A stretch of DNA of 64,000 nucleotides from Octopus sinensis (Eukaryota), in assembly GCF_006345805.1 (NCBI RefSeq), contig NC_043008.1, positions 48,794,001-48,858,000 on the forward strand, written 5' to 3'. Within the stretch, counting starts at the first letter, position 1. Every line of letters starts with the position of its first letter. The notes beneath the pieces were generated by a model, which made no database searches, was not told where the DNA came from, and saw only the letters and a list, made by a program, of their open reading frames with translations. Made by a program: the position numbers and the translations under genes. Shown piece by piece: positions 1 through 56,377 of this stretch.

Positions 1-3000
1 GTTGGACAGTTTGACCAAGGGCTGGCAAGCCAGAAGGCTGCACCAGGCTCCAATCTGATTTGGCAAGGTTTCTACAGCTGGATGCCCTTCCTAATGCCAA
101 CCACTCCAAGTGTATAATGGGTGCTTTTTATGTGCCACTGGTGGAAACTCCAATTATGGCCAATCAAGAAACCCCACAGATCCAGGATTATTCTAACCAC
201 TAAAGGTATGAGGCCTTTCTTCTGCTTTCCAATCCACAGGTTCACTCTAACCATTTTTGCAACAGTCACCCATCTTCTCACAAATAACACTTTCCTTTCC
301 AAGTGGAACTTATCCTTTCAGTCTCGTCCACCATAAAACTTTATTTGCTATAGCCACTCGTCAGAGGAAGACTGCCTGCCCTGCTTTGTTAATGGTGGGT
401 GGTGGGGAGATACTCACGACAGATTTGCCCCACACATGACAAAAGCTGTTTGACCTAACTCCACAAATCAACAATGCTCGAACGCTGTGCAAGTGCATGC
501 AAAATGGTTTCATCATTCTGCGTGCACCTCAGACAGTCCTGCCAAACAACACTTTTGTGCCTATAGAATTTATCTCAAATTGACAGTGTCCTCGGTAGCA
601 CTGCCAGGCCAGAGATTTCTGGAAGTTAACTATGATTTCAAATTTTGGCACCAGGTGAGCATTTTTGAGGGGAGGGGCTAGGCTTATTACATCAACCCTG
701 AAAGGATGAAAGGCAAAGTTGCCCTTGGTAGGTTTTGAACTCAAAGTGTAAAGAGCTGCAACAAATACCACAAGTATTTTGCCCTACACTAATGATTCTA
801 CCAATCCACCGCCTTCAGGATAATGATAATAAATAACGGGCAGTGGGTGAGGTGGCAAAACTGGTAGAGTGTTAGACAAAAATATCCTACATAGCTTTTT
901 TTGTTTTTGCTTTGAGTTCAAATCCCATCAAAGTTGATATTGTCTTTTATCCTTCTGGGGTTGATAAAACAATGTGGCAGAATTGAGGATCAATACCAAC
1001 AGTTTAAGAAAGTTTGCGGAGTGTCAATAAAGTTTAGTTGCTTATAAGAAGTTGAGAGGTTAACGTTTTCAACTTTTGTCCTTCAAGTCAAAAAAGGGAT
1101 GAAGAAGTTGTGTGTATGTGCCATTAACCTTCGACTCTCCATTTATTACTCTTCTATTCAAGGGCAAGAGTCCTGGACAATAGCCTCTCAATTTCTATTA
1201 ACAAATTGATATGACATTATTCCATAAACTCTCCATTAGATTTATCATCAATCACATAGGCCGTCACCATTTTCATTCTGGGCATTACGTTAAGATTAAA
1301 TTTTCTCCCAAAATTCCAAGACTTGTGTTTGTGTCAGAAATCATTCTTCAACCTTTTCTCTCTTCCAACCAGAGTTCATAAAACACAGTACCATTTATAT
1401 ACTGGAGTTGGTTCAAGTGATTATCTCACCCCATTTCCTGACTTTGTAATAGAAATGATTATTATTAATTAATAATTTGTATAAAAATTATCATTATTAA
1501 TCAAGGTGGCAAGCTTGCAGACTCGTTAGCATGTCAGGCAAAGTACTTCACAGCATTTTGTCAGTCCTTGTATTTGAGGTCAAGTTCCACTGAGGTTGTT
1601 TTTGCCTTTCATCCTTTTAGGATCAATAAAAAAGTACCAGTTGATTATGGGGGTCGAAGTAATTACCCCCTTCCCCGAAACCGCTGGCTTCGTACCAAAA
1701 CTTGAAACCATTATTATTGTTATCATACAGGATCACATCAGAGGCAAACCTTCTCTTATCAATGAATTTAATCATACAATATTCAGAATGAGAAGAAAAA
1801 AGTTCAAAGGGAAAATCTTAAGATATATTACAAGCCATATTCAAAGGTAGGACTTGCAAGAGAAAAGAAAGAAAACATTAGGTATGCACACACACACACA
1901 CAGAGGGTGGTGGTGTATGGGAGCAATTGGTTGGCTTTCACCAACATCACAAACTGCAAAACTAATTATTGAACAGTAGCAGACTTAGGATCATCCAGTT
2001 TTTTTCCCCCTCAGGTCTGGTGTATCTAGGACTACATTGACCATTATATCCTTCTTTGTAATAAAGACTGTAAGATGCGATCTGAGGGTGGATTCAGCTG
2101 CTCTTTCTGGAAAACTAATGAATCACAGAAGAGTAAAGGAGGGAAACCTCACCCCACTAAAAACAAAAAAAAAAACGAAGACCAGTTAGTGAAGTAGTAG
2201 TGAAAATATATAAATATATTAATAACTCTGGAATCTGACACCGAAATACTATACTGGAGGGAGGAGGGAGCAGGAAGAGGAGGAGGAAGGAGTGAAGACT
2301 TTAAATAAATAAATAAATAAAAATACGGTGCTGCCAACGTCGAAAGATGGAAATGGTAAGATCATCATTATTAGAGGGATGATGATGGTCCATTCCAAGT
2401 GGCAAAAATATCCGAGTAATCGAGCGATACTAAGAAGGTAGGAAAACAATGTTTGTTTACATGAATATTTTCCTAAGATGGATGTTGATGCAATCAGCCT
2501 TGATCCGACACCGGGGTAACGGAAACCCTTCGCCGTCTCTCCTGGTCTCCTTCCTGTTTCCATCAACCAAACAAGAAGACCTACACAGATAGTTGCAAGA
2601 CCACACGGAACCTCTGTACGGTCGCCTGACCCGTTAGAAATAGCAACTAAATCCTACCCCCATCACACCTTTCTGTTTTAAATGAGAAAAGGGTTATATA
2701 GTGTTCCTGATAAGGATAGGATGGTCATGGCCGGAACGCCTTTCACCATAGGTCAGTTCGATCACGGCTGACATAAACAAGGAAGGGCCCATCACAATGT
2801 ATTCCGAGACAAGCGTGGTCTCGGCTGGATTGCCCTTGATCATGTTTACTCAATCAGGCCTGACCTAGGGCTAATCAGCAGTGGCAACAACAACGCAGCT
2901 ATTTCAGAAATCAAAATGATTGCACTTACATAAACACGTCCACACACACAGACACAGACACAGACACACACACACGGCTACAGTTTCTCTCTATTTATCT

Positions 3001-3229: not shown

Positions 3230-3484
3230 GGGAGAGAGAGAGAGAGAGAGAGGCGACTGAGTACAGATCACACGGACACAAAATATGTAGACAGAAGCAG
3301 AAGGATTACCAAATACACAAACAGAATTCTAGACACATAATAATAATGATAATAATATAGGACATCATATACACAAACGTGTAGACACACAGTTTCGAAA
3401 ATAATAAATCACTGAGGTTAATTATTCGATAGTTATACACACAGACACACACACACAGGTGTGTGTATTTTTATACACACAGAC

Positions 3485-3519
<35 letters not shown>

Positions 3520-3987
3520 ATATATTATATATCCATGAATACAAATGGAGAGTGTAGGTGGGAGTGTGCACACCCACACTGTGTAGAAAAAGCAGAAATA
3601 GGCGCGCACAGACACACGGAGACTGGTTCTCATGATAATGAAATATGGAACACAGAGAGAGAAGTAGGAGGGAGGGAGGGAGAGAGAGATGTGCTGTCGT
3701 AAAGACTGAAACGGGGGGAGGAGGAGGGGGAGAGACACACATAAATGAATGGAGCTCAGTCAGCAAAAGCTAACGTCTACACACATTATATATATATATA
3801 TATATATGTATATATGTGTGTATATATAACTTGGAGTCATTAGATATAAAGGCATGGAGAGGGACGTGTACACATCTATATTCATCTACACGAAACTCTA
3901 GATCTTTGAGTTACTCCTTTAACAATTTCGTCTAATATAAAATTATGTATCTCTCTCTCCCTCTCTCCTCCTTGTATATATAACTTA

Positions 3988-4024
<37 letters not shown>

Positions 4025-4199
4025 ATATATATCCCATTTGTATGAGGCGGCGACGCACACGCCCTCTCCCATCGTCTTTTCATCTAAAGAGTGTATTCAG
4101 AAGTATTTAATCACGAGGGGAGTTCACCATTAGTTGATTTAACAGTCTATATAATACATAACACACCGATATGTTAAAACATTTGCTAAGCTCTTTTAT

Positions 4200-4234
<35 letters not shown>

Positions 4235-4787
4235 CATATAAGCTTTACCAAGCACAGTGCATGTGTGTGCGCGCGCGTTGTGTGTGTGTGTCTGTTCGTC
4301 CTCACAGTTTACCGCCCGAAACTCTTCTTCCAGCTCAATCGTTAAACACTGAATGATACGAAAGTGGATCGTTTGTTTTGTTTAAAATCCGTAAAACAAG
4401 ATAAGGAGAACGGAGTCCTGACATTTCGGGCAGACGAAATTTTCTACATATTTTATTGAATTTCAGGCAAACAACTTTATATAAACTGGGTTACGGTGAA
4501 TAGTGGGTCGTCTGTGAGATCGGGGAGAGGAGAAGAGAGAGAGAGAGAGAGAGAGGCGACTGAGTACAGATCACACGGACACAAAATATGTAGACAGAAG
4601 CAGAAGGATTACCAAATACACAAACAGAATTCTAGACACATAATAATAATGATAATAATATAGGACATCATATACACAAACGTGTAGACACACAGTTTCG
4701 AAAATAATAAATCACTGAGGTTAATTATTCGATAGTTATACACACAGACACACACACACAGGTGTGTGTATTTTTATACACACAGAC

Positions 4788-4824
<37 letters not shown>

Positions 4825-5289
4825 ATATATTATATATCCATGAATACAAATGGAGAGTGTAGGTGGGAGTGTGCACACCCACACTGTGTAGAAAAAGCAG
4901 AAATAGGCGCGCACAGACACACGGAGACTGGTTCTCATGATAATGAAATATGGAACACAGAGAGAGAAGTAGGAGGGAGGGAGGGAGAGAGAGATGTGCT
5001 GTCGTAAAGACTGAAACGGGGGGAGGAGGAGGGGGAGAGACACACATAAATGAATGGAGCTCAGTCAGCAAAAGCTAACGTCTACACACATTATATATAT
5101 ATATATATATATGTATATATGTGTGTATATATAACTTGGAGTCATTAGATATAAAGGCATGGAGAGGACGTGTACACATCTATATTCATCTACACGAAAC
5201 TCTAGATCTTTGAGTTACTCCTTTAACAATTTCGTCTAATATAAAATTATGTATCTCTCTCTCCCTCTCTCCTCCTTGTATATATAACT

Positions 5290-5336
<47 letters not shown>

Positions 5337-5511
5337 ATATATATCCCATTTGTATGAGGCGGCGACGCACACGCCCTCTCCCATCGTCTTTTCATCTAAA
5401 GAGTGTATTCAGAAGTATTTAATCACGAGGGGAGTTCACCATTAGTTGATTTAACAGTCTATATAATACATAACACACCGATATGTTAAAACATTTGCTA
5501 AGCTCTTTTAT

Positions 5512-5550
<39 letters not shown>

Positions 5551-5862
5551 CATATAAGCTTTACCAAGCACAGTGCATGTGTGTGCGCGCGCGTTGTGTG
5601 TGTGTGTCTGTTCGTCCTCACAGTTTACCGCCCGAAACTCTTCTTCCAGCTCAATCGTTAAACACTGAATGATACGAAAGTGGATCGTTTGTTTTGTTTA
5701 AAATCCGTAAAACAAGATAAGGAGAACGGAGTCCTGACATTTCGGGCAGACGAAATTTTCTACATATTTTATTGAATTTCAGGCAAACAACTTTATATAA
5801 ACTGGGTTACGGTGAATAGTGGGTCGTCTGTGAGATCGGGGAGAGGAGAAGAGAGAGAGAGA
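3230..5862. repeat. Direct tandem duplication of about 1.3 kb (two copies)
   Basis: aggcgactgagtacagatc starts at 3251 and again at 4554 (offset 1303). The copies differ almost only in microsatellite lengths, and the junctions lie in (GA)n tracts. Confidence 0.95.
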
Positions 5863-6261
5863 GGGGGGAGGGAAGTAACGTTTCGGGTTATGCTCCTCAC
5901 ATAGGACAAACCCCACTTTCTGAGGTGATCCCACACGGGTATCCTCTACCTATTAAACCCTTCCATTCCACGCTGATCCAGTCCAAACGGGTGCCGTCGT
6001 ACCCAGAGCTCCACTTCTCTCCACCCCTCATTCTAATCTAAAAACTTTCCCCTTATATCCTCTCCCCTGTTTATATCTTCACATTAATACCCAAGAGATC
6101 CACTTCTCTCTACCCACGGGGATGCAGACCACAAGGGTACCCTCATGACAATTATCCACGAAGGTTTTCAGTCGAGATTCGTGACTATTACAAATATTAA
6201 TACATTCACTCCCTACCATAGGAATGTGTATGTGTGTGTGTGTGTGTGTGAGAGAAAGAGG

Positions 6262-22995: not shown

Positions 22996-23005
22996 CCAAG
23001 AGACT

Positions 23006-26000
23006 GCCAGTACTGCCTGACTGGCTCCTGTGCTGGTGGCATGTAAAAAGCACCATTCGAGCAAGGTTGATGCCAGTACTGCCTGACTGGCTCCTGTGCT
23101 GGTGGCATGTAAAAAGCACCATTCGAGCAAGGTTGATGCCAGTACTGCCTGACTGGCTCCTGTGCTGGTGGCATGTAAAAAGCACCATTCAAGCAAGGTT
23201 GATGCCAGTACTGCCTGACTGGCTCCTGTGCTGGTGGCATGTAAAAAGCACCATTCGAGCAAGGTTGATGCCAGTACTGCCTGACTGGCTCCTGTGCTGG
23301 TGGCATGTAAAAAGCACCATTCAAGCAAGGTTGATGCCAGTACTGCCTGACTGGCTCCTGTGCTGGTGGCATGTAAAAAGCACCATTCAAGCAAGGTTGA
23401 TGCCAGTACTGCCTGACTGGCTCCTGTGCTGGTGGCATGTAAAAAGCACCATTCAAGCAAGGTTGATGCCAGTACTGCCTGACTGGCTCCTGTGCTGGTG
23501 GCATGTAAAAAGCACCATTCAAGCAAGGTTGATGCCAGTACTGCCTGACTGGCTCCTGTGCTGGTGGCATGTAAAAAGCACCATTCGAGCAAGGTTGTTG
23601 CCAGTACTGCCTGACTGGCTCCTGTGCTGGTGGCATGTAAAAAGCACCATTCGAGCAAGGTTGATGCCAGTACTGCCTGACTGGCTCCTGTGCTGGTGGC
23701 ATGTAAAAAGCACCATTCAAGCAAGGTTGATGCCAGTACTGCCTGACTGGCTCCTGTGCTGGTGGCATGTAAAAAGCACCATTCGAGCAAGGTTGATGCC
23801 AGTACTGCCTGACTGGCTCCTGTGCTGGTGGCATGTAAAAAGCACCATTCAAGCAAGGTTGATGCCAGTACTGCCTGACTGGCTCCTGTGCTGGTGGCAT
23901 GTAAAAAGCACCATTCAAGCAAGGTTGATGCAGTACTGCCTGACTGGCTCCTGTGCTGGTGGCATGTAAAAAGCACCATTCAAGCAAGGTTGATGCCAGT
24001 ACTGCCTGACTGGCTCCTGTGCTGGTGGCATGTAAAAAGCACCATTCGAGCAAGTTGATGCCAGTACTGCCTGACTGGCTCCTGTGCTGGTGGCATGTAA
24101 AAAGCACCATTCAAGCAAGGTTGATGCCAGTATGCCTGACTGGCTCCTGTGCTGGTGGCATGTAAAAAGCACCATCCAGCAAGGTTGATGCCAGTACTGC
24201 TGACTGGCTCCTGTGCTGGTGGCATGTAAAAAGCACCATTCAAGCAAGGTTGATGCCAGTACTGCTGACTGGCTCCTGTGCTGGTGGCATGTAAAAAGCA
24301 CCATTCAAGCAAGGTTGATGCCAGTACTGCTGACTGGCTCCTGTGCTGGTGGCATGTAAAAAGCACCCGAGCAAGGTTGATGCCAGTACTGCCTGACTGG
24401 CTCCTGTGCTGTGGCATGTAAAAGCACCATTCGAGCAAGGTTGATGCCAGTACTTCCTGACTGGCTCCTGTGCTGGTGGCATGTAAAAAGCACCATTCAA
24501 GCAAGGTTGATGCCAGTACTGCCTGACTGGCTCCTGTGCTGGTGGCATGTAAAAAGCACCATTCAAGCAAGGTTGATGCCAGTACTGCCTGACTGGCTCC
24601 TGTGCTGGTGCATGTAAAAAGCACCATTCGAGCAAGGTTGACAGTCAGTACTGCCTGACTGGCTCCTGTGTGGTGGCATGTAAAAAGCACCATTCAAGCA
24701 AGGTTGATGCCAGTACTGCTGACTGGCTCCTGTGCTGGTGGCATGTAAAAAGCACCATTCGAGCAAGGTTGATGCCAGTACTGCCTGACTGGCTCCTGTG
24801 CTGGTGGCATGTAAAAAGCACCATTCAAGCAAGGTTGATGCCAGTACTGCCTGACTGGCTCCTGTGTGGTGGCATGTAAAAAGCACCATTCGAGCAAGGT
24901 TGATGCCAGTACTGCCTGACTGGCTCCTGTGCTGGTGGCATGTAAAAAGCACCATTCAAGCAAGGTGATGCCAGTACTGGCCTGACTGGCTCCTGTGCTG
25001 GTGGCATGTAAAAAGCACCATTCAGCAAGGTTGATGCCAGTACTGCCTGACTGGCTCCTGTGCTGGTGGCATGTAAAAAGCACCATTCAAGCAGGTTGAT
25101 GCCAGTACTGCCTGACTGGCTCCTGTGTGGTGGCATGTAAAAAGCACCATTCAAGCAAGGTGATGCCAGTACTGCCTGACTGGCTCCTGTGAGGGTGGCA
25201 TGTAAAAAGCACCATTCGAGCAAGGTTGATGCCAGTACTGCCTGACTGGCTCCTGTTGCTGGTGGCATGTAAAAAGCACCATTCAAGCAAGGTTGATGCC
25301 AGTACTGCCTGACTGGCTCCTGTGCTGGTGGCATGTAAAAAGCACCATTCAAGCAAGGTTGATGCCAGTACTGCCTGACTGGCTCCTGTGCTGGTGGCAT
25401 GTAAAAAGCACCATTCGAGCAAGGTTGATGCCAGTACTGCCTGACTGGCTCCTGTGCTGGTGCATGTAAAAAGCACCATTCAAGCAAGGTTGATGCCAGT
25501 ACTGCCTGACTGGCTCCTGTGCTGGTGGCATGTAAAAAGCACCATTCAAGCAAGGTTGATGCCAGTACTGCCTGACTGGCTCTGTGCTGGTGGCATGTAA
25601 AAAGCACCATTCAAGCAAGGTGATGCCAGCCAGTACTGCCTGACTGGCTCCTGTGCTGGTGGCATGTAAAAAGCACCATTCGAGCAAGGTTGATGCCAGT
25701 ACTGCCTGACTGGCTCCTGTGCTGGTGGCATGTAAAAAGCACCATTCAAGCAAGGTTGATGCCAGTACTGCCTGACTGGCTCCTGTGCTGGTGGCATGTA
25801 AAAAGCACCATTCGAGCAAGGTTGATGCCAGTACTGCCTGACTGGCTCCTGTGCTGGTGGCATGTAAAAAGCACCATTCGAGCAAGGTTGATGCCAGTAC
25901 TGCCTGACTGGCTCCTGTGCTGGTGGCATGTAAAAAGCACCATTCGAGCAAGGTTGATGCCAGTACTGCCTGACTGGCTCCTGTGCTGGTGGCATGTAAA

Positions 26001-26336
26001 AAGCACCATTCAAGCAAGGTTGATGCCAGTACTGCCTGACTGGCTCCTGTGCTGGTGGCATGTAAAAAGCACCATTCAAGCAAGGTTGATGCCAGTACTG
26101 CCTGACTGGCTCCTGTGCTGGTGGCATGTAAAAAGCACCATTCAAGCAAGGTTGATGCCAGTACTGCCTGACTGGCTCCTGTGCTGGTGGCATGTAAAAA
26201 GCACCATTCAAGCAAGGTTGATGCCAGTACTGCCTGACTGGCTCCTGTGCTGGTGGCATGTAAAAAGCACCATTCGAGCAAGGTTGTTGCCAGTACTGCC
26301 TGACTGGCTCCTGTGCTGGTGGCATGTAAAAGGCAC
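23006..26336 (+). repeat. 66-bp tandem array of about 50 units, inside a LINE-3'UTR-type element that ends near 26510
   Basis: Unit GCCAGTACTGCCTGACTGGCTCCTGTGCTGGTGGCATGTAAAAAGCACCATTC(G/A)AGCAAGGTTGAT. The last unit runs into CACCCACTAC...TAGGAAGGGCATCCAGCTGTAG...GGACGTTAAAC and a GAT-rich tail. Confidence 0.97.
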
Positions 26337-26929
26337 CCACTACGCACTCGGAGTGGTTGGAATTAGGAAGGGCATCCAGCTGTAGAAACCTTGCAAGATC
26401 AGACTGGAGCCTGGTACAGCCTTCTGGCTTGCCAGTCCTCAGTCAAACCGTCAAACCGTCAAACCCATGCCAGCATAGAAAGTGGACGTTAAACAACGAT
26501 GATAATGACTGAACCTCATAATTTGTATGTCTGTGTGTGTGCACATGTGTACTAATTACTTTAGGCCATAAATGTTTTTCTTACTCCATATGTATCTAAG
26601 TGTCTTGTTTGTATTCATGATAAGACAACTGCTAAGCTTATGACACCTATTGAGGTAGAAACATGTTCACAGCTGTCCTGTTGTTTCCAGTCAGACTGTT
26701 TATCCCTTAATGGCATGTCTGCTTTGGAGAAATCTTCATTCTTGAGATTATCTCCCCTTCTTATTTGGTGTTGGTTGCAATTGCCACAAGGTGTTACTTT
26801 ATTCTTTTCTTGAAGGGAAGATAATTTCACGGTCAAGAATTTATCTTGTATGGTATTTAATATCTTTACTTATTTGCATTGTTTATAACCATGCTACCCA
26901 CCACCCTCAGCTATTTCTCTTAACTAATT

Positions 26930-46684: not shown

Positions 46685-46793
46685 TGCCAACTGTTTCGTG
46701 AGACTAGTATTATGGTGAGGCAACCAGCTTTGGAAATTATTGACTACATCAAGAATGCCAATTACGACCATCCCGTACTCAGACTTATGCTTT
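46685..46793 (+). CDS. DAP3: DAP3 coding exon 3
   Basis: Encodes CQLFRETSIMVRQPALEIIDYIKNANYDHPVLRLML, versus DAP3 [24 protein letters not shown]...IRYLL. Ends in phase 1 at T|GTATCCTTT. Confidence 0.93.
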
Positions 46794-48344
46794 GTATCCT
46801 TTGTCTTTCACTTATTTCTTCACATGCCTCCCTAGAAATATGGTTTAGCGGTTCACAAATTCACTTGGGATCAGCAAAATATTGCTTCGGTTTATTTGCA
46901 GCTGAAGGACACATTGTGAAGTTGGCCGTTACTTTTTACAATGTTAAATATTTAACATCGTCAGACTCCCTTCAGCAGGAGAACACAGATGGTGTAGTTA
47001 CTGTTAATATTAATACCCATGTGAAAATACTACATTTAGAAATCAATATTTATATTAGAAATCAATATTAATACTATTGGAGGGCATTGAGTTGGCAAAA
47101 TCAATAGATTGCTGTTAAAATGGCTTGTGGTACAGAGAAATAATCCTTAACATTCTGTGTTCAAATCTCACTAGGGCCTTCTTTACCTTTCATTATCCTG
47201 GGTACATACAATGCCATTGATGTTCTGGCTTTGGGTTAATCACCTTTTCTTCTCTACCAAATTGAGGTGTTGTACTTGGGTTAGAAACCAATTCTCTAAA
47301 AGACAGTGAATGGAAGAATCAGCCGAGTTTCTGGCACAATGTCTTGTGCTATTTCTGTTCTTTTACATTGAGAGTTCAAATTCCACCAAGGCATTTACAA
47401 CAAGTGTTCCAATTGATCCAATCAACAGAACATCCAGCTGGTGAAATTAACATGCAAGTGGCTGAGTACTCCACAGACATATGGACACAGGATGTGACAA
47501 AGCTGGCCCCTTTGAATTAAAGATATAACTCATTATTCCCAGCTGAGTGGATTGGAACAGCAGGAATTGAACTTGTAAACTCACAATCTATTACTTTGTT
47601 GCCCACAAGGGGCTAAACACCGAGAGGACAGACAAATGGATTACGTCGATTACATCGACCCCAGTGCATAACTGGTACTTATTTAATCGACCCCGTAAGG
47701 ATGAAAGGCAAAGTTGACCGTGACAGAATTTGAACTCAGAACGTAGTGGCAGACGAAATACTGCTAAGCATTTCGTCCGGCGTACTAACAGTTCTGCCAG
47801 CTCGCCGCCTCACAATCTCACAATCATGAGCTGAAAGCGCTAAGCACTAAGCAACATACCTTCACTCCATTGCAGAACTGTAATACCCTAATGTTTGTTT
47901 TGATGAAACTGCATTGCACAACCTCAATTTCTTTCATTATATATCGAAATTCTTGTATTAATCTGAAGTCAAGAACATCCACTCATTTGATGTATTGAAT
48001 TTCATGACACAAAGTTCTGAGTTGAAAAGCTTATCAAAGTTCATTATTTACATTTGACGGATATTTATCGTCATCTTGTTTGTTGTTAACACAACGTTTT
48101 GGCTGATATACCCTCCAGCCTTTATCAGGTGTCTTGGGAAAATTTCAAACCTGGGTTCTCATTCCTAAGGTATTTTTCAATGTTATTATTGTTATTATTG
48201 CCTTTGCACAGCTTCTAATGCTGGCGATGTACTATGGTGACAGCTGTTCACTACCAGTGAACTAAGGTAATACCTCTTATTTTCCAAGCACCTTCCAGAA
48301 TTATTATTATTATTATTATTATTGTTATTATTAATATTATTCAG

Positions 48345-48905
48345 TAGTTTTATTTTTATAGCGTGCTTTCACTTCACTACCGAGTGCAGCTCTGTGTGCC
48401 TTGGGTATGTGTTGTGATTTGTTGTGATTCTCTGATGGTTATTGTATGGAAAGTGTTCTGCGTAGGATGTGTGCAGTGCCTAGTAGTGCAATTTTCTGTA
48501 TGTTATATGTGTTTGTAAGTCCTGGTGTTTTTGTTATGTATTTGTCTGAATATTTTTTTATCATGCCTAATGCACCTACTATGATAGGAATTGTTTCTGT
48601 TTTTAGATTCCACATCCGTGTTACCTCTATTTCCTGGTCTTTGTATTTTGAAAGTTTCTCCATTTCTTTTAGAGACACATTGTCATCTGCTGGCATTGAT
48701 ACATCAATTAGAAAGCATTTTTTTTTTCTTTATGATCTCTAACAACTATATCTGGCCTATTGGCCTTAATTTCTCTGTATGTATTGGCATATCCCAGAGC
48801 ATGGTTGCTTTCTCGTTTTCTGTGACCTTTTCTGGTGTGTGCCTATACCATCTTTTTTCTGTTGTTATTCCATAATGTTGGCATAGCTTCCAGTGTATGT
48901 AGCTC
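48345..48905 (-). mobile_element. R4/Dong-like non-LTR retrotransposon 3' end (restriction-like endonuclease domain)
   Basis: Minus-strand translation shows KANRPDIVV...FLIDVSMPADDNVSLKEMEKLSKYKD...RMW...IPIIVGALG, a PD-(D/E)xK endonuclease. The 3' end abuts (TAA)n at 48298-48345. Confidence 0.8.
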
Positions 48906-50049
48906 CCATTATTCATCATCATTATCGTTTAACATCCACTTTCCATGCAAGCATGGGTTGGACGATTGACTGAGGGCTGGTGAACTAGATGGCTGCACCA
49001 GACTTCAATCTTGATCTGGCAGAGTTTCTACAGCTGGATGCCCTTCCTAATGCCAACCACTCTGAGAGTGTAGTGGGTGATTTTACATGCTGCCGGCACG
49101 GGGGCCAGTCAGGCGGTACTGGCAATGACCTCGCTTGAATCTTTTTACACATACCACCGGCACATACCACGATCACGCTCAAATGGTGCCTCTTACCTGC
49201 CACCAGCACGGAGGCCAGTTAGCCACTCTGGCAACGATCACGCTCGGATGGTGCTCTTGGCACGCTACTAGCACGGGTACAAGTGCCAGTAAAGCAACGC
49301 TGGTAACAATCACACTCAAATGGTGCCTTTTAAGTGCCACTGGCATGGAAGCTGGTTAGCTGCTCTGTCAACGATCACGCTCGTATGGTGCTCTTTGCAC
49401 CCCGCTAGCACGGATGCCAGTCATTGAATTTGATTTTGTATTCTTCTTCTTATTATTATTATTATCAGACTCAGGATCTTGAAGTTAGTAGCCTGCTCTC
49501 TTAACCACAGTGGTTAAGAGCACGTGCTACTAACCCCAAGATTCCAGGCAGTGACCTGAACAACAATAATAATAATAATAACATTGAAAAATACCTTAGG
49601 AATGAGAACCCAGGTTCGAAATTTCCCCAAGACACCTGATAAAAGCTTGGAGGGTATATCAGCCGAAATGTTGTGTTAGCAACAAACAAGATGAGGACAA
49701 ATAGCTGTCAAATGTAAATAATGCAAATAATTCCTCATCTCTTAAATATAGAACTGTCTTATCAAAGTTAATTTACCTTTGGAGAAATTACTAATCCTCT
49801 GGTTTAATTAGTTCATCTACTATTCTCCTCCTCCTCATTATAATCATTTTGGTGCCACATATAAAACACCTGTGCTGGTACCATGTAAAAAGCACCCAGT
49901 ACACTCCATATAGTGGTTGGCATTAGGAAGGGAATCCAGCTGTAGAAACTGTGCAAATACAGACAAATGGGGTTTGGCGTAGCTCTCTGGATTGCCACTC
50001 CTGTCAAACCATCTAACCCATTTCAGCATGGAAAATGGATATTAAATGA

Positions 50050-50547
50050 TGGAGATATGCTGTGATTGCAAAGACCCGGGCTGCTTCCTGCACCAGTTTC
50101 GCATAGCCCCAGCCCATCCAAAGTACCTTGGATTGCAGAACGACCTGCTGTGCTTGCCTTGGATCGTAGGGTGACCTGCTGTTCCTGAGGAGACCTATTG
50201 AGTCAAGTACATCAATATCAAAATAAATATCAAATGGAAATTGTAGTTACGATACCTGTGCCAGTGGCACGTAAAAAGCAGCATCCGAACGTGGCTGATG
50301 CCAGCACCACCTTGACTATCTTCTGTGCCGGTGGCACGTAAAAAGCACCAACCGATCGTGGCCGCTGCCAGCCTCCCCTGGCACCTGTGCCGGTGGCATG
50401 TAAAAAGCACCCACTACAATCATGGAGTGGTTGGCGTTAGGAAGGGTATCCAGCTGTAGAAACACTGCCAGATCAGACTGGAGCCCAGTGCAGCCTCCTG
50501 GCTTCCTAGACCCCGGAAAACGGACATTAAACGATGATGATGATGAT
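50050..50547 (+). mobile_element. 5'-truncated LINE 3'UTR copy (similar copies at 1-140, 17400-17590, 20480-20810, 35330-35930, 48920-49440, 57110-57390, 58700-58985, 60500-61015, 63800-64000)
   Basis: Shares the terminal block TAGGAAGGGCATCCAGCTGTAGAAAC...CCAACCCATGCYAGCATGGAAA...(GAT)n and the internal GTGGCAYGTAAAAAGCACC units with 39100-39570. Confidence 0.8.
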
Positions 50548-50711
50548 GTGTGTGTCTGTGATAATGTACCTAATGAGAGAAATTATTAAAGTTAAATCAG
50601 TAATTTCCTACATGTTGCTACAATTATGACCATCTCGTATTTTCTCTATCGCATGATAATAAAATTACAAAATCCAACTCTCGTTAAATATTCCCTGACT
50701 GTTTCTCTAAG

Positions 50712-50804
50712 ATGGTGAAAGAGGAGTAGGCAAAACCCTGACTTTGGCTCATGTCATACATTTCTGTGCCATGCAAAAATGGTTTCTCGTTCACGTTCAT
50801 TGGC
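50712..50804 (+). CDS. DAP3: DAP3 coding exon 4 (P-loop)
   Basis: Encodes (Y)[30 protein letters not shown], a Walker A GxxGxGKT matching DAP3 YGEKGTGKTLSLCHVIHFC. Donor C|gtaagt, 93 nt, phases 1/1. Confidence 0.95.
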
Positions 50805-53800
50805 GTAAGTATTTCACTTCTGTCTCGTATATTTTCTACTTTTATCTTATTTTAATAATTTCCCAGTTTTTTTTCTTCTTTCTTTCTTCGTAAAACGTAT
50901 TTCGTTGTGAATATTTTGATAATTTTACACCACGATTTTTTTTTCTTTTCTCTTGTATGTTTTTAAACACCTTTTTTTTTTTTTTCGAAAGTCCACAGCA
51001 GAAGGCAGGCAGCAGCTAGAATTTCATCTTCTGCTGATTCTCTTCCCATCCAAAATGCTTTTTTTTTTATCTCTTATATATTTGTGTTCCACCATTACTT
51101 AGGCAGAATTTACAATGAAGGTGGTTGTGTGTGAAAGCAGTAGCTAGACCTGACACAGTGCTGCCTGCAGCTTTCACAGTAGTCAGGCTGTGAAAGAGTT
51201 AATCCATTGACAGCAAGATTTATAGTTGAGAATAGTTGTCTGTAACAATAGACATTAAACACTGCTGCTTGCAATTGAATGCTTGCAATTAACTCATGTA
51301 TGAGTGTCTGTCTGTCAGTCTCTCTGCATGTGTGTGTGTGTGTGTGTGCATATATAAATAGGTAGATGTGTGTAAGAGCTAAAAAAGAAACGAGATGAGG
51401 TAAATCTTTGAAATAGCCAGTTGCAGGTAGCACTGTATTTCAACTGCTCTGATGTAAAACTATTAGAAATGAAATATCTTGTTGGTTTTGTCAACCATCC
51501 AACTCACTCTCTTCTCTCTTCCGGCAAACGGTCTTTCTGGAAATGTTAGAATTTTTGCACCACTCTCCCCCCCCAGTCCCACTCCTCGTGACATATTATT
51601 TTGTGAACTTCATCCAATTGATTTCTATCACATCTTTTCCTCACATGTTAACGTTGTGATCCCGGATTGAACCTCCCGCACCTTTCCTCCACATAAATAG
51701 GTGTGATCCAGTGGTAAGTAGCTTGCTTCCCAGCCATATGGTTCAGGGTTCAGTCCCACTGCATGGCACCTTGTGCAAATGTCTTCTGCTAAAGCTTTGG
51801 GAGGCTGACCAAAGACTTGTGAGTGGGTTTGATAGATGGAAGCTGAAAGATGCCTGTTGCGTGTGTGTGTGTGTCTGTTTGTCTCCACCATCACTTGACA
51901 ACTGCTATTGCTATGTTTACACCCTTGTAACTTAGCAGTTCAGCCAAAGAGACCAATAGAACAAGTACCGGGTTTTAAAAAAAAAGATCCTGGGTTTGAT
52001 TCACTCAACTGAAATCTCTTCAAGACAGTGCTCCAGTATGGCCACAGTGTAATAACTGAAACAAAAGATTAAAAAAACCCTTTGACCCCCCCCCCCGAGG
52101 AATGTGACCTTATTCTGCACTGGTTTTTACTGTATTGAGTGCATTATCACATAGCTGACATGGTGCTGGCCAATCTATTCTTGGACATCTATAGACGTTC
52201 TGTTGGTGACCATCACAGCTGACAGTGTTGGCTGTCAGATTCACACGAGTTGTTCTTTTGCACTCAATTGTTGGTGGGGTTCGTTCTAGCAGACTGGTCC
52301 AGGTTGATCTGCTGCTGCTGGCAGCGGCGGCAACCATAATCATCTGCTACTCAGAGTTCCGCTTTGTATCCTTTGTCTTTCACTTATTTCTTCGCATGTC
52401 TCCCTAGAAATATGGTTTAGCAGTTCACAAATTCACTCTTTTACACGTTTCAGTCATTTGACTGCGTCAATGCTGGAGCACCGCCTTTAGTCGAAGAAAT
52501 CAACCCAAGGACTTTATTCTTTGTAAGCCCAGCACTTATTCTATCGGTCTCTTTTGCTGAACTGTTAAGTTTTGGAGACATAAACAAGCAATGGTGGGGG
52601 GGGGGGAACAAACACAGATACAAAGACACACACACATAAATATATATTTACACATGATGGGCATCTTTCAGTTTCTATCTACCAAATCCACTCACAAGGC
52701 TTTGGTCAACCAAGGCTATAGTAGAAGACACTTGCTCAAGGTACCATGCAGTGGAATTGAACCTGGAACCATGTGGTTGGGAAGCAAGCTTCTTACCACA
52801 CAGCCACGCTGTTGTTGTTTTGTGTGGGCCACAAAGTTTTTATGAATGGCTTACTGTGACTTAAACCATTCAGTTATTTAGAAGGGACAGTGAGCAGTTG
52901 TATTAAAAGATCACTGAATTCTGACATGTTTGAGTCTTGGTTAAACTGACATACAAAGAAAGAGAAAGAAGCATTAAATAGTTTCAAGACATTCAACGTT
53001 TTGCACTAATTACTTACTAAAATGGTTGCCGCCTCTTTCTTTGATTTAACTCTCTCTCTCTCTCTTTTTCTCTCCTTTGTTCCTCCCTCTCTCTCTCTGT
53101 CCCATCTGCCTCTCTCTTTTTTTTCTCCTCTCCCTTCTCCATCAGTCACCAAATATTGACTTAATAATTGTTCTGCACTATTTAGTTGACCTTTTCTAAA
53201 CACACACACATACACACACATACACACACATATATATATATATATGGTACATACGTGTGTGTGTGTGTGTGTAGTTTAATGAGAGGCAAATCTTTAACTG
53301 GATGTGAACTAAAAAGAATTACAAAATAATGTAGTGAAATAATAAAGTGAAGCAAAATGTTTGTTTTAATTGTAACAAGAGACACTTTTTACACAAAGAA
53401 CTCAGATTTCAAAATTAGTCGTTAAAACTAAATCTAAGGAACTTTTACATTTTAATTCATTCTATCATTTCCTCAAACAACATGAAATTTGCGTGGCTCC
53501 CAGTTTGAGAGATTTACTTTTGATGGGGGTAAACATGTAGCTGTTGACCTGTTATCTTTACCAGAAACACACACACAGACACACACACACGTTTGTCAGG
53601 CTCATGTATTTGTTTATATATTTTAACATTTTTGTCTCTCACCCATTATGTTCTTGTTAAACCTCCATTTGTTCTTCACCCCCTCTCTTCGTTGCCCTCT
53701 CTCCTATTAATTACCTTCTCTCCTATTTTTCTACCATTTCATCTTTGTAATGAAATATAGTTTTGAGTCTGTCCATATCTAACACCCATACCATCAGCTG

Positions 53801-54233
53801 CCTTTGCTCACCATCTCTCTCTCTCTTTCTCTCTTTTACTCTTATTTACTCTCTCTTTCTCCTACCACTTAATTCCTTACCAGTTTTTACTGACATCCAT
53901 TACTCTTTCTTTGTCTCCCTCCTGTCTCTCCCTCCCCACCCTTATCTTACCTATGCTGTTTTCCTATTCAACCTCATTACCAACAACCAGTAAGTAGCTG
54001 CCAATCAGTCTCTCTTCCTCTATCCCCCCCTTCTCTATCGACTTCTTGTTCTAAACCTCAATTTCCCCTCATCATAAATCTCTCTTCTGTCACCCTTTCA
54101 CTCCCAGTTCTCTCCCTCATCCCTCTCTCTTTTACTCAGCCATCCAATCATTGCCTTCAATAAAATAGTTCTTGTCTGAGAACCTTGTTTTCGTGTGTGT
54201 GTATGTGTGCACATGTATGCGCGTACACACACA

Positions 54234-54273
<40 letters not shown>

Positions 54274-55160
54274 CACACAGTGTTTTATTCAGACTTGCTC
54301 TACTAAAAGTTAGGGTTAGTGTTAGGGATGCCGAAATCAAGTTTGATCATTCGAATGTCCTGAGTAGTAAAGACAGCCCCAGGGTTTCTAAATAAGGTCA
54401 ATTGCTACTAAACGAAGAGCAAAGTTTATTCTTATTGGTCAGTTTCAGCTGCATGGTGGAACCAATAATTTAATAATTGCTACATGTTGTAGAGACTGCT
54501 ATGTATCGCCTGGATGGGAGGCAACTGTCATAAGAGACAGTGGTCTCCCTTGCTTTTATTATTTCAATAAAATTTTCGAAATGGGACAAACAACTAATTT
54601 ATATTATTTTCACACTATTCTTTAAATTCTACCAAAATTTTAAATTTTGCTGCTGGAATTTCTACTGAAAGCAAGATATTACTGGTATCTATTGTGCCAG
54701 AGTTGCCGCCCACCCAGCAGCTGTCTGACATTAGCACCTTGTCAAATTACATACTTCACCACATCGTCCAAACTAATAAGAGCCTTCTTCATTATCATCC
54801 AATGATATTTCTCCTTATTTAGAACCCGTGACAGCCATACAACTCACTATTATCGAATTCAAGTAATCAGACATACTTTAGTGTATGTGAAACTTGTAGT
54901 AATTGCTTATCAAAGTCAAACTGTTAATACAAATATTTAACGTCCACAACATGTATTGAATACTCTTTTCTTTATACATGAGTGTGTGTATGTGTGTGTG
55001 TGTGTGCACGATTGACCACTAAATCCACAAGGTTTTTTCATTCTCTCTCTTTTTTCATTCTCTCTCTCTTTATTTCCTTGTGTCCTTTCTGTTGAAGAGC
55101 ATAGGCTCGAAATGTAAAGGACTTTCTCACCTTCCCAAGCATCAGACTAATACAGATATG

Positions 55161-55192
<32 letters not shown>

Positions 55193-56240
55193 GACCTATT
55201 TTGGGCACATGGCAGTCGAGTAATCCACTTTGTCCACGTCCTGACCAACAAAGTCTCTTTAATTCATGTTTCCACCATTTTTTAGATCTTAAAAGATTGT
55301 CACTCATGGGCTTATCTAATCAATGCTCTATTATTATTATTATTATTATTATTTATTTATTAATTAATTAATAGATATGGTAGCAAGCTGGGTGAAATGC
55401 TTAGCAGTATTTTGTCTGCCACTGTTGTGAGTTTAAATTCTTCCGGGTCGACTTTGTCTTTCATCCTTTCTGGGTCATTTAAATATGTACCAGTTATGCA
55501 CTGGGGTCGATGTAATCGACTTCATCCTTTCCCCCAAATTTAAGACCTTGTGCTTCCAGAAGAAAGCATTATTATTATTATTAATAGATAAGGCAGCAAT
55601 CTGGCAGAGTTGTTAGCACCCTGGACAAAATGCTTAGCAGCCTTTTCTCTGTCTTTGCATTGTAATTTCAAATTCTACTGAGGCTGATGTAGCCTTTTAT
55701 CCTTTCGTAGTGAATAAAATAGGTACCAGTTGGTCAATATAACCGACTAGGGGTGATATAATCAACTCACTCCTACCCAGAGAATTTCAGGCCTTGTGCC
55801 TACGGTAGAAAGGATTATTATTATTATTATTAGAGCTCAACACTGAACTAAATACCTTGTGGTGTTTATAACTATAACCCTTTAAGTTTAGAGTTCAAAT
55901 CTCACCAAAATTAACTTTACCTTTCATTCTTAAAGGGTAGGTAAAATAATGTACCAGTTAATTACAGGGGTCGATGTAATCACCTGTCCCCTCTTGACAA
56001 ATATCTGGCCCTGTACCTATGAAACTGTTGTTGTTGTTGTTGTGGTGCAGCAGAAACAGGAGAATGCCAGACTAAATATTGGTATTTAGTTATTGTTCTG
56101 TGTTCAAATCTCAACCGGATTGATAAAATAACAAATGGTATTGAATTACTGGGATCACTTCTCCAACCATGACCCCCCCCCATCCCTCAAGAATTTGTTG
56201 CCTTCAGCCAATAAAAGAAATTACCAATATTGTTTTTCAG

Positions 56241-56377
56241 CGTCAATGTGGAAAAAGGCTTGGCGAGAAATCTCTATGTCAACATTCAAACCGGGTCGAA
56301 TCGACTTCCCTCTCATAGCAGTGGATTGGTTGAAATTGTTCAAGAGTCAGAATGAAGTATTTTTACAGGATATAAAG
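56241..56377 (+). CDS. DAP3: DAP3 coding exon 5
   Basis: tttttcag|...AAG|gtatga. Encodes SMWKKAWREISMSTFKPGRIDFPLIAVDWLKLFKSQNEVFLQDIK, versus DAP3 HLWVKNCRDLLQS...RFDQPLEASTWLKNFK. Confidence 0.93.

What the first reader, a model, noticed from the sequence alone, without database searches (positions are those of the whole stretch)
52330..52437. Orphan duplicate of the U12 donor in the next intron, with the intronic part better conserved than the exonic part
52366-52437 copies 46794-46865 with only 3 differences in 72 nt, including an intact GTATCCTTT. The preceding 25 exon-derived nt differ at 6 positions. The copy sits in the U2-type intron 50805-56240, whose acceptor has no evident U12 branch site. 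Possible AG acceptors lie 73-76 nt upstream (52289, 52292), which would define a frame-shifting exon. U11 binding to non-splicing U12-like donors is known to activate upstream 3' splice sites in the SNRNP48 and RNPC3 feedback loops. A similar decoy or poison-exon sensor on DAP3 would be new. Neutral local duplication is the null explanation.
Basis: partly seen in the sequence, partly recalled or inferred. Interest (0 to 1): 0.7.

Follow-up and report, generated by a model that had tools for sequence, protein, structure and literature searches.

The report
Neutral short duplicate of a splice junction
A 90-base piece spanning the end of a DAP3 exon and the start of its rare U12-type intron has been copied once into the next intron; it looks like an ordinary repair patch wedged between two SINE repeats, and nothing suggests it acts as a splicing sensor.

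Summary
46794-46865 and 52366-52437 differ at 3 of 72 positions. The 25 bases before them differ at 6. GTATCCTTT is intact in both copies. The host gene is DAP3/mS29, and the source intron (46794-50711) has U12-type signals.

The functional reading finds no support here:
- The copy carries a single U12-like donor. The known U11-binding enhancer (USSE) is a tandem pair.
- No second U12-like donor lies within 2.7 kb, and no branch-site partner lies downstream.
- The proposed upstream acceptors have poor pyrimidine tracts.
- The host gene is not a minor-spliceosome component.
- At 4-7% divergence, an intact 9-mer is the expected neutral outcome (probability 0.7-0.8).
- The three intronic differences are all transitions, two of them at CpG sites.
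- The "exonic part diverged more" signal depends on where the left edge is drawn (p=0.01 with 25 nt, p=0.1 with 18 nt).

The copy ends exactly at the 3' tail of an antisense SINE. It sits in the predicted loop of a hairpin formed by two inverted SINEs. It has no target-site duplication and no further homology to the source.

The best reading is a neutral templated patch or short local duplication. Conservation across species and RNA-seq junctions could not be tested with these tools.

The parts
46685..46793 (+). DAP3 exon (…NANYDHPVLRLML, ends in phase 1). Its last 18-25 nt are the exon-derived source of the copy.
   Evidence: Pfam DAP3 PF10236 E=1.4e-27; PDB mS29 chains E=1e-34.
46794..50711 (+). 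Intron with U12-type GT-AG signals. Donor GTATCCTTT at 46794-46802. Branch site TTCCCTGAC at 50691-50699 (7/8 to TCCTTRAY), with the branch A 13 nt from the AG. Its first 72 nt are the intronic source of the copy.
50712..50804 (+). DAP3 P-loop exon ([12 protein letters not shown]…).
50805..56240 (+). U2-type intron (GTAAGT … TTGTTTTTCAG) that hosts the copy.
51711..52065 (+). tRNA-derived SINE in sense orientation. It is the left arm of an inverted SINE pair.
52066..52347 (.). Spacer unique in the window, with no protein or RNA family match. It contains the proposed weak acceptors at 52289 and 52292.
52348..52437 (+). The duplicate: 18 nt of exon tail plus 72 nt of intron head, 93.3% identical to 46776-46865. 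A possible ragged extension reaches 52341.
52366..52374 (+). Orphan U12-type donor motif GTATCCTTT.
52438..52812 (-). tRNA-derived SINE in antisense orientation. Its 3' tail (…GTAAAAGAG) abuts the last base of the copy. No A-rich tail, no target-site duplication.
56241..56377 (+). Next DAP3 exon (PSMWKKAWREI…QDIK).

Best explanation
The feature is a young, selectively neutral, two-copy local duplication. About 90 nt spanning the junction between a DAP3 exon and its U12-type intron was copied, in the same orientation, into the next intron 5.57 kb downstream. The most likely origin is a short templated patch laid down during repair of a DNA break at the 3' end of a pre-existing antisense SINE. 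The template was either nearby DNA or the unspliced DAP3 pre-mRNA. The intact GTATCCTTT is a passenger that has simply not yet mutated. With no branch site downstream and no tandem partner, it is expected to be ignored, like the many chance U12-like motifs in introns. What is shown: the duplication, its boundaries, its context and the absence of partner signals. What is inferred: the repair-patch mechanism and the lack of function.
For: (1) There are only two copies in the window: 93.3% over 90 nt, sharp edges, no homology resuming beyond either edge. (2) The right edge coincides to within 1-2 nt with the 3' terminus of a minus-strand SINE, as defined by eight family tails. That SINE lacks an A-rich or microsatellite tail and has no target-site duplication. 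Only AG is shared at the junction. (3) No TSD, no poly(A), a short patch and intronic or unspliced template sequence all match class 2 templated sequence insertions attributed to break repair (PMC5110952). (4) The three intronic differences are all transitions, two at CpG, with K2P distance 0.044, as expected of recent neutral drift. (5) Under that divergence the probability that the 9-mer is still intact in the copy is 0.74-0.83, so its survival needs no selection. (6) RTATCCTT occurs at chance frequency in the window: 3 found, 4.9 expected. Orphan U12-like donors are therefore commonplace. (7) No partner branch site lies between 52438 and 56240, and there is no tandem U12 5'ss. (8) No RNA family, stable structure or coding signal lies in or beside the copy.
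Against: The exon-derived end is much more diverged: 6/25, mostly transversions, all derived in the copy. Uniform neutral decay does not predict this (p=0.012 with the 25-nt boundary). I attribute it to a ragged or error-prone junction, or to non-homology of the last 7 nt, but that is inference. The only short dispersed duplicate in 64 kb happens to cover the only authentic U12 donor (source-position chance about 90/64000 per event). That is a coincidence, although one selected post hoc. The crude SINE consensus (about 9% divergence of the head) dates the SINE only roughly, so the order of events is not established. Copy number in the whole genome and presence in related species are unknown.
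Confidence: 0.77

Rival explanations
1. USSE-like decoy: U11/U12 di-snRNP binds the orphan donor and, by exon definition, activates the upstream AG at 52289 or 52292. This would create a frame-shifting, stop-containing exon, or nuclear retention, coupling DAP3 output to minor-spliceosome activity.
For: The 9-nt U12 5'ss is identical to the authentic one, including the three exon bases before it. AGs lie 73-76 nt upstream, and the hypothetical exon carries an in-frame TAA. A GTAAGC lies 157 nt downstream at 52523. U11 bound to unspliced U12 5'ss does activate upstream 3'ss in SNRNP48 and RNPC3 (PMC5473595, PMC8329584).
Against: USSE is a tandem repeat of U12 5'ss. Here there is one, and the nearest motif with one mismatch or fewer is 2.7 kb away. 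The acceptors have 55-60% pyrimidines with a G-run, against 95% for the exon at 46685. The host is not a minor-spliceosome gene, so there is no feedback logic. Any intronic insert would carry stops. The sequence pattern is explained by recent neutral drift. The site lies in the loop of a predicted long inverted-SINE hairpin, i.e. in repeat-derived DNA.
Confidence: 0.04
2. The copy is the remnant of a larger segmental duplication of the exon and intron region, later eroded by the SINE insertion, deletions and divergence.
For: Same orientation and close proximity. Weak residual identity (10/22) in the 22 nt left of the HSP. Other local duplications exist in the window.
Against: No homology resumes beyond the SINE or anywhere else in 50805-56240. 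The spacer 52066-52347 matches nothing upstream. A SINE inserting into the duplicate should leave a target-site duplication and the continuation of the homology on its other side; neither is present.
Confidence: 0.1
3. The 90 nt, perhaps together with the 282-nt spacer, is cargo captured by a mobile element and is present at many places in the genome.
For: It is embedded between transposable elements, and the spacer is of unknown origin.
Against: There are only two copies in 64 kb. No terminal inverted repeats or target-site duplication bracket it. There is no transposase-like coding signal.
Confidence: 0.06
4. It is an assembly or polishing artefact.
For: None specific.
Against: The two copies differ at 6 of 90 positions with a biological (transition/CpG) pattern. 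Artefactual duplications are normally identical.
Confidence: 0.02

Closest known systems
Class 2 templated sequence insertions (DNA or RNA-templated patches at repaired double-strand breaks; Onozawa et al., reviewed in PMC5110952)
   Same: A short patch copied from an intact donor site. No target-site duplication and no poly(A). Minimal microhomology at the junction. Donor sequences include intronic or unspliced transcribed DNA.
   Different: Here the donor is only 5.6 kb away in the same gene. The event is fixed or old enough to have 4-7% divergence. One end is ragged. The mechanism is inferred from anatomy alone.
[quoted passage not shown] 2010; PMC5473595, PMC8329584, PMC3584512)
   Same: A consensus U12-type 5' splice site lying in non-coding RNA, not usable for splicing, with AG dinucleotides upstream.
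   Different: It is single, not tandem. It sits in a mitoribosomal gene, not a minor-spliceosome gene. The upstream 3'ss is weak. There is no evidence of conservation. It lies in repeat-rich DNA.
Chance U12-like donor motifs in introns
   Same: An orphan RTATCCTT with no branch-site partner. Such motifs occur at about 0.04 per kb per strand in this window by chance.
   Different: This one arose by copying the authentic site, so it carries the full 9-mer and the authentic flanks.

Membership tests
[quoted passage not shown] | Tandem repeat of two U12-type 5' splice site sequences | tested here: not met
   There is one motif at 52366. No RTATCCTT, and no GTATCCTTT with one mismatch or fewer, lies within 2.7 kb. 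Definition from PMC5473595 and PMC8329584.
[quoted passage not shown] | Host gene encodes a U11/U12 di-snRNP protein, giving auto- or cross-regulatory feedback | tested here: not met
   The host is DAP3/mS29.
[quoted passage not shown] | Deep conservation of the element and of its spacing to the upstream 3'ss | not testable with these tools
   No related genomic sequence could be retrieved.
[quoted passage not shown] | A competent upstream U2-type 3' splice site that is activated | tested here: inconclusive
   AGs exist at 52289 and 52292, but their pyrimidine tracts are 55-60% with a G-run, against 95% for the exon at 46685. Usage needs RNA data.
U12-type intron (orphan donor as a real 5' splice site) | 5'ss consensus RTATCCTT | tested here: met
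   GTATCCTTT at 52366-52374.
U12-type intron (orphan donor as a real 5' splice site) | Branch site TCCTTRAY about 10-15 nt upstream of a downstream 3'ss | tested here: not met
   No TCCTTRAY on the + strand between 52438 and 56240. Five sites have up to 2 mismatches, but none has a good match; only three have an AG or AC in range at all, and those lie in SINE or microsatellite DNA.
U12-type intron (authentic intron 46794-50711) | 5'ss consensus plus branch site at the correct distance | tested here: met
   GTATCCTTT, and TTCCCTGAC (7/8) with the branch A 13 nt from the AG.
Poison (NMD) cassette exon | Usable 3'ss and 5'ss flanking a stop-containing or frame-shifting segment, with junction reads | tested here: inconclusive
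   The frame shift and the TAA are present. However, the 5' end at 52365 has only a U12 donor with no partner and 3/9 matches to the U1 consensus. The 3'ss is weak. RNA-seq is not available here.
Interspersed repeat / transposable element | Multiple dispersed copies, with terminal repeats or a target-site duplication | tested here: not met
   Two copies in 64 kb and no bracketing repeats. The genome-wide count is not testable here.
Templated break-repair patch (class 2 TSI) | Short insert copied from an intact donor, with no TSD or poly(A) and with NHEJ-type junctions | tested here: met
   Criteria from PMC5110952. The empty pre-insertion site is not available, so insertion as such is inferred.

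The most novel reading that the evidence does not exclude
A single duplicated U12-type donor, held in the loop of an inverted-SINE hairpin inside a DAP3 intron, recruits U11 and makes DAP3 (mitoribosome/apoptosis) expression sensitive to minor-spliceosome activity. This would be a newly born, lineage-specific USSE-like sensor outside the minor-spliceosome genes.
Probability: 0.04. Interest if true: 0.65.

Novelty: already known. Interest (0 to 1): 0.12.

Why it matters
If the decoy reading were true, it would be the first U11-dependent splicing switch outside SNRNP48 and RNPC3, and would show how such switches are born by duplication. As it stands, the locus is a tidy example of how a short templated patch can plant a perfect minor-spliceosome donor in a new intron. 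That is raw material for evolution, but there is no sign that it has been put to use.

Tried and rejected
- **Cross-species or other genomic copies.** Nothing was retrieved, so conservation is untested.
  - A protein search with 113 aa of DAP3 found no hits.
  - A search with a multiplexed six-frame query of both loci found no hits.
  - Exact-product look-ups of ORFs beside the copy and across the source found none on record.
  - A metagenome DNA scan with a 23-mer found 0 matches.
  - The DAP3 coding sequence runs off the window end, so the full protein could not be looked up.
- **Literature on a DAP3 minor intron.** Nothing relevant was found.
- **Intronic 72 nt as an old SINE head.** This was suggested by a 21-nt, 76% match (family D7). 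Only 1 of 5 SINE copies gave a marginal local alignment against shuffles, so I treat it as chance.
- **Hidden RNA gene or structure that could explain the conservation.** There is no Rfam hit at either copy, and the folds are no better than shuffles.
- **Coding or transposase signal beside the copy.** There are no Pfam hits.
- **Larger duplicated block.** No further colinear homology was found.
- **SINE 3' transduction or reverse-transcriptase template switching.** The geometry does not fit. The copy lies at the SINE tail and is antisense to the SINE, and no SINE abuts 46866 at the source.

Full report

Direct reading and counting confirm the finding. 46794-46865 and 52366-52437 differ at 3 of 72 positions, and the preceding 25 nt differ at 6. 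BLAST within the window gives one HSP, 46776-46865 to 52348-52437: 93.3% over 90 nt, E=1.5e-33, same strand, 5572 bp apart. A self-comparison of the whole window shows only these two copies. Identity on the same diagonal drops to the 25-34% background immediately outside. GTATCCTTT occurs exactly twice in 64 kb, at these two places.

**Gene context**

The three exons at 46685-46793, 50712-50804 and 56241-56377 translate to a peptide that matches two references:
- Pfam DAP3 (PF10236, E=1.4e-27).
- Mammalian mitoribosomal mS29 chains in the PDB (E about 1e-34).

The gene runs off the window end.

Intron 46794-50711 has U12-type GT-AG signals. Its donor is GTATCCTTT. Its branch site is TTCCCTGAC (7/8 to TCCTTRAY), with the branch A 13 nt from the AG. 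Intron 50805-56240 is U2-type, with a GTAAGT donor and a T-rich tract before CAG. I could not verify the taxon, and nothing here depends on it.

**What surrounds the copy**

The copy lies between two tRNA-derived SINEs of one family in inverted orientation: 51711-52065 (+) and 52438-52812 (-). I aligned the 3' tails of eight family members. The minus-strand SINE ends at …GTAAAAGAG, and the very next base is the last base of the copy.

That SINE has no A-rich or microsatellite tail, unlike several relatives. It also has no target-site duplication: its 5' flank is …AACAACAACA and its 3' flank is GTGAATTTG…. Homology to the source does not resume beyond the SINE or anywhere else in the intron.

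The 282 nt to the left of the copy (52066-52347) are unique in the window and match no Pfam family. RNA folding of 51690-52830 predicts that the two SINEs pair into a long imperfect duplex (-511 kcal/mol). The spacer and the copy would form its loop.

**Does the sequence pattern call for selection?**

- **Intronic differences.** All three are transitions, and two are at CpG sites. The K2P distance is 0.044.
- **Motif survival.** With 4-7% pairwise divergence, the probability that a 9-mer in the copy is still intact is 0.74-0.83. It is 0.54-0.68 even if every change fell on the copy. Motif survival is the expected neutral outcome.
- **Exon-derived end.** This end really is more diverged. The changes are mostly transversions, and the copy's codons (H L L L R V P L) do not look ancestral. 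The Pro of the "HP" motif, which the copy lacks, is conserved in the mammalian mS29 sequence aligned. The statistic depends on the boundary: p=0.012 with 25 nt and p=0.10 with the 18-nt BLAST edge. I read this as a ragged or error-prone junction, or as non-homology of the last 7 nt. This remains the one feature that simple neutral decay does not predict.

**Tests of the decoy or poison-exon idea**

- **Tandem donors.** The USSE of SNRNP48 and RNPC3 is defined as a tandem repeat of U12 5'ss. It also has a conserved distance to an upstream 3'ss, and it sits in minor-spliceosome genes (PMC5473595, PMC8329584, PMC3584512). Here there is a single site. The nearest motif with one mismatch or fewer is 2.7 kb away.
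- **Host gene.** The host is DAP3, not a minor-spliceosome component.
- **Branch site.** No TCCTTRAY lies on the + strand between the copy and exon 56241, and relaxed scanning finds no usable branch site with an acceptor.
- **Upstream acceptors.** The AGs at 52289 and 52292 follow tracts of 55-60% pyrimidine with a G-run, against 95% for the exon at 46685.
- **Hypothetical exon.** The 76/73-nt exon shifts the frame and carries a TAA, but most intronic segments would.
- **Background frequency.** RTATCCTT occurs at chance frequency in this window: 3 observed, 4.9 expected. Pre-mRNAs must routinely tolerate orphan U12-like donors.
- **Cooperative recognition.** The U11/U12 di-snRNP recognises the 5'ss and the branch site cooperatively (PMC3584512). 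A lone donor is therefore a poor substrate.
- **Other functions for the 72 nt.** No Rfam family or stable structure explains them.

**Most likely origin**

The features are:
- a short insert;
- an intact donor site;
- no target-site duplication and no poly(A);
- a junction sharing only AG with the SINE end;
- a template that is transcribed, unspliced sequence.

These match class 2 templated sequence insertions ascribed to double-strand-break repair (PMC5110952). I therefore favour a patch laid down at a break at the SINE's 3' end, templated either by nearby DNA or by DAP3 pre-mRNA.

The SINE head is about 9% from a crude six-copy consensus. The patch shows about 2-3% divergence per lineage. 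This hints that the SINE is the older of the two, but the consensus is too rough to be sure.

Alternatives with lower support are an eroded larger duplication, capture by a mobile element, and an assembly artefact.

**What could not be done**

No related genomic sequence was reachable. The evidence is negative results from two protein searches, two exact-product look-ups and one metagenome scan. No RNA-seq is available here either.

**Verdict**

The duplication is real, and it is an ordinary kind of event. The functional reading is unsupported and fails the one defining USSE feature that could be tested. Interest is low. The residual probability of a USSE-like role is about 4%.

Noticed in passing
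window 51711-52065 (+) and 52438-52812 (-): Two SINEs of one family lie in inverted orientation 372 nt apart. The arms are 78-88% complementary in blocks. The predicted fold is a near-continuous, roughly 350-bp imperfect dsRNA hairpin (-511 kcal/mol) inside the DAP3 pre-mRNA. This is the kind of substrate expected for ADAR editing. The orphan donor sits in its loop.
   Followed up: partly
window 23005-26337: A 66-bp satellite array of 50.8 copies with 96% matches.
   Followed up: partly
window 3232-5863: A tandem duplication of about 1.3 kb, 98.6% identical, with only two copies in the window.
   Followed up: no
window 48042-48200 and 49564-49723: A 160-nt inverted repeat pair, 92.5% identical and 1.36 kb apart, inside the U12-type intron. 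Only two copies in the window. It could be the terminal inverted repeats of a DNA transposon.
   Followed up: no
window 47144-47151: A perfect U12 branch-site consensus TCCTTAAC lies 350 nt into the authentic U12 intron. The nearest AG is about 24 nt downstream, too far for a normal U12 3'ss. The motif count in the window is at chance level.
   Followed up: partly
window 2046-2053: ATATCCTT on the + strand, far upstream of DAP3. The motif frequency in the window is at chance level, and no gene context was examined.
   Followed up: no
window 53190-53280 and 54186-54271: CA/TA microsatellite palindromes give sub-threshold matches to several miRNA models in Rfam. All are far below the gathering scores, so they are low-complexity artefacts.
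   Followed up: yes
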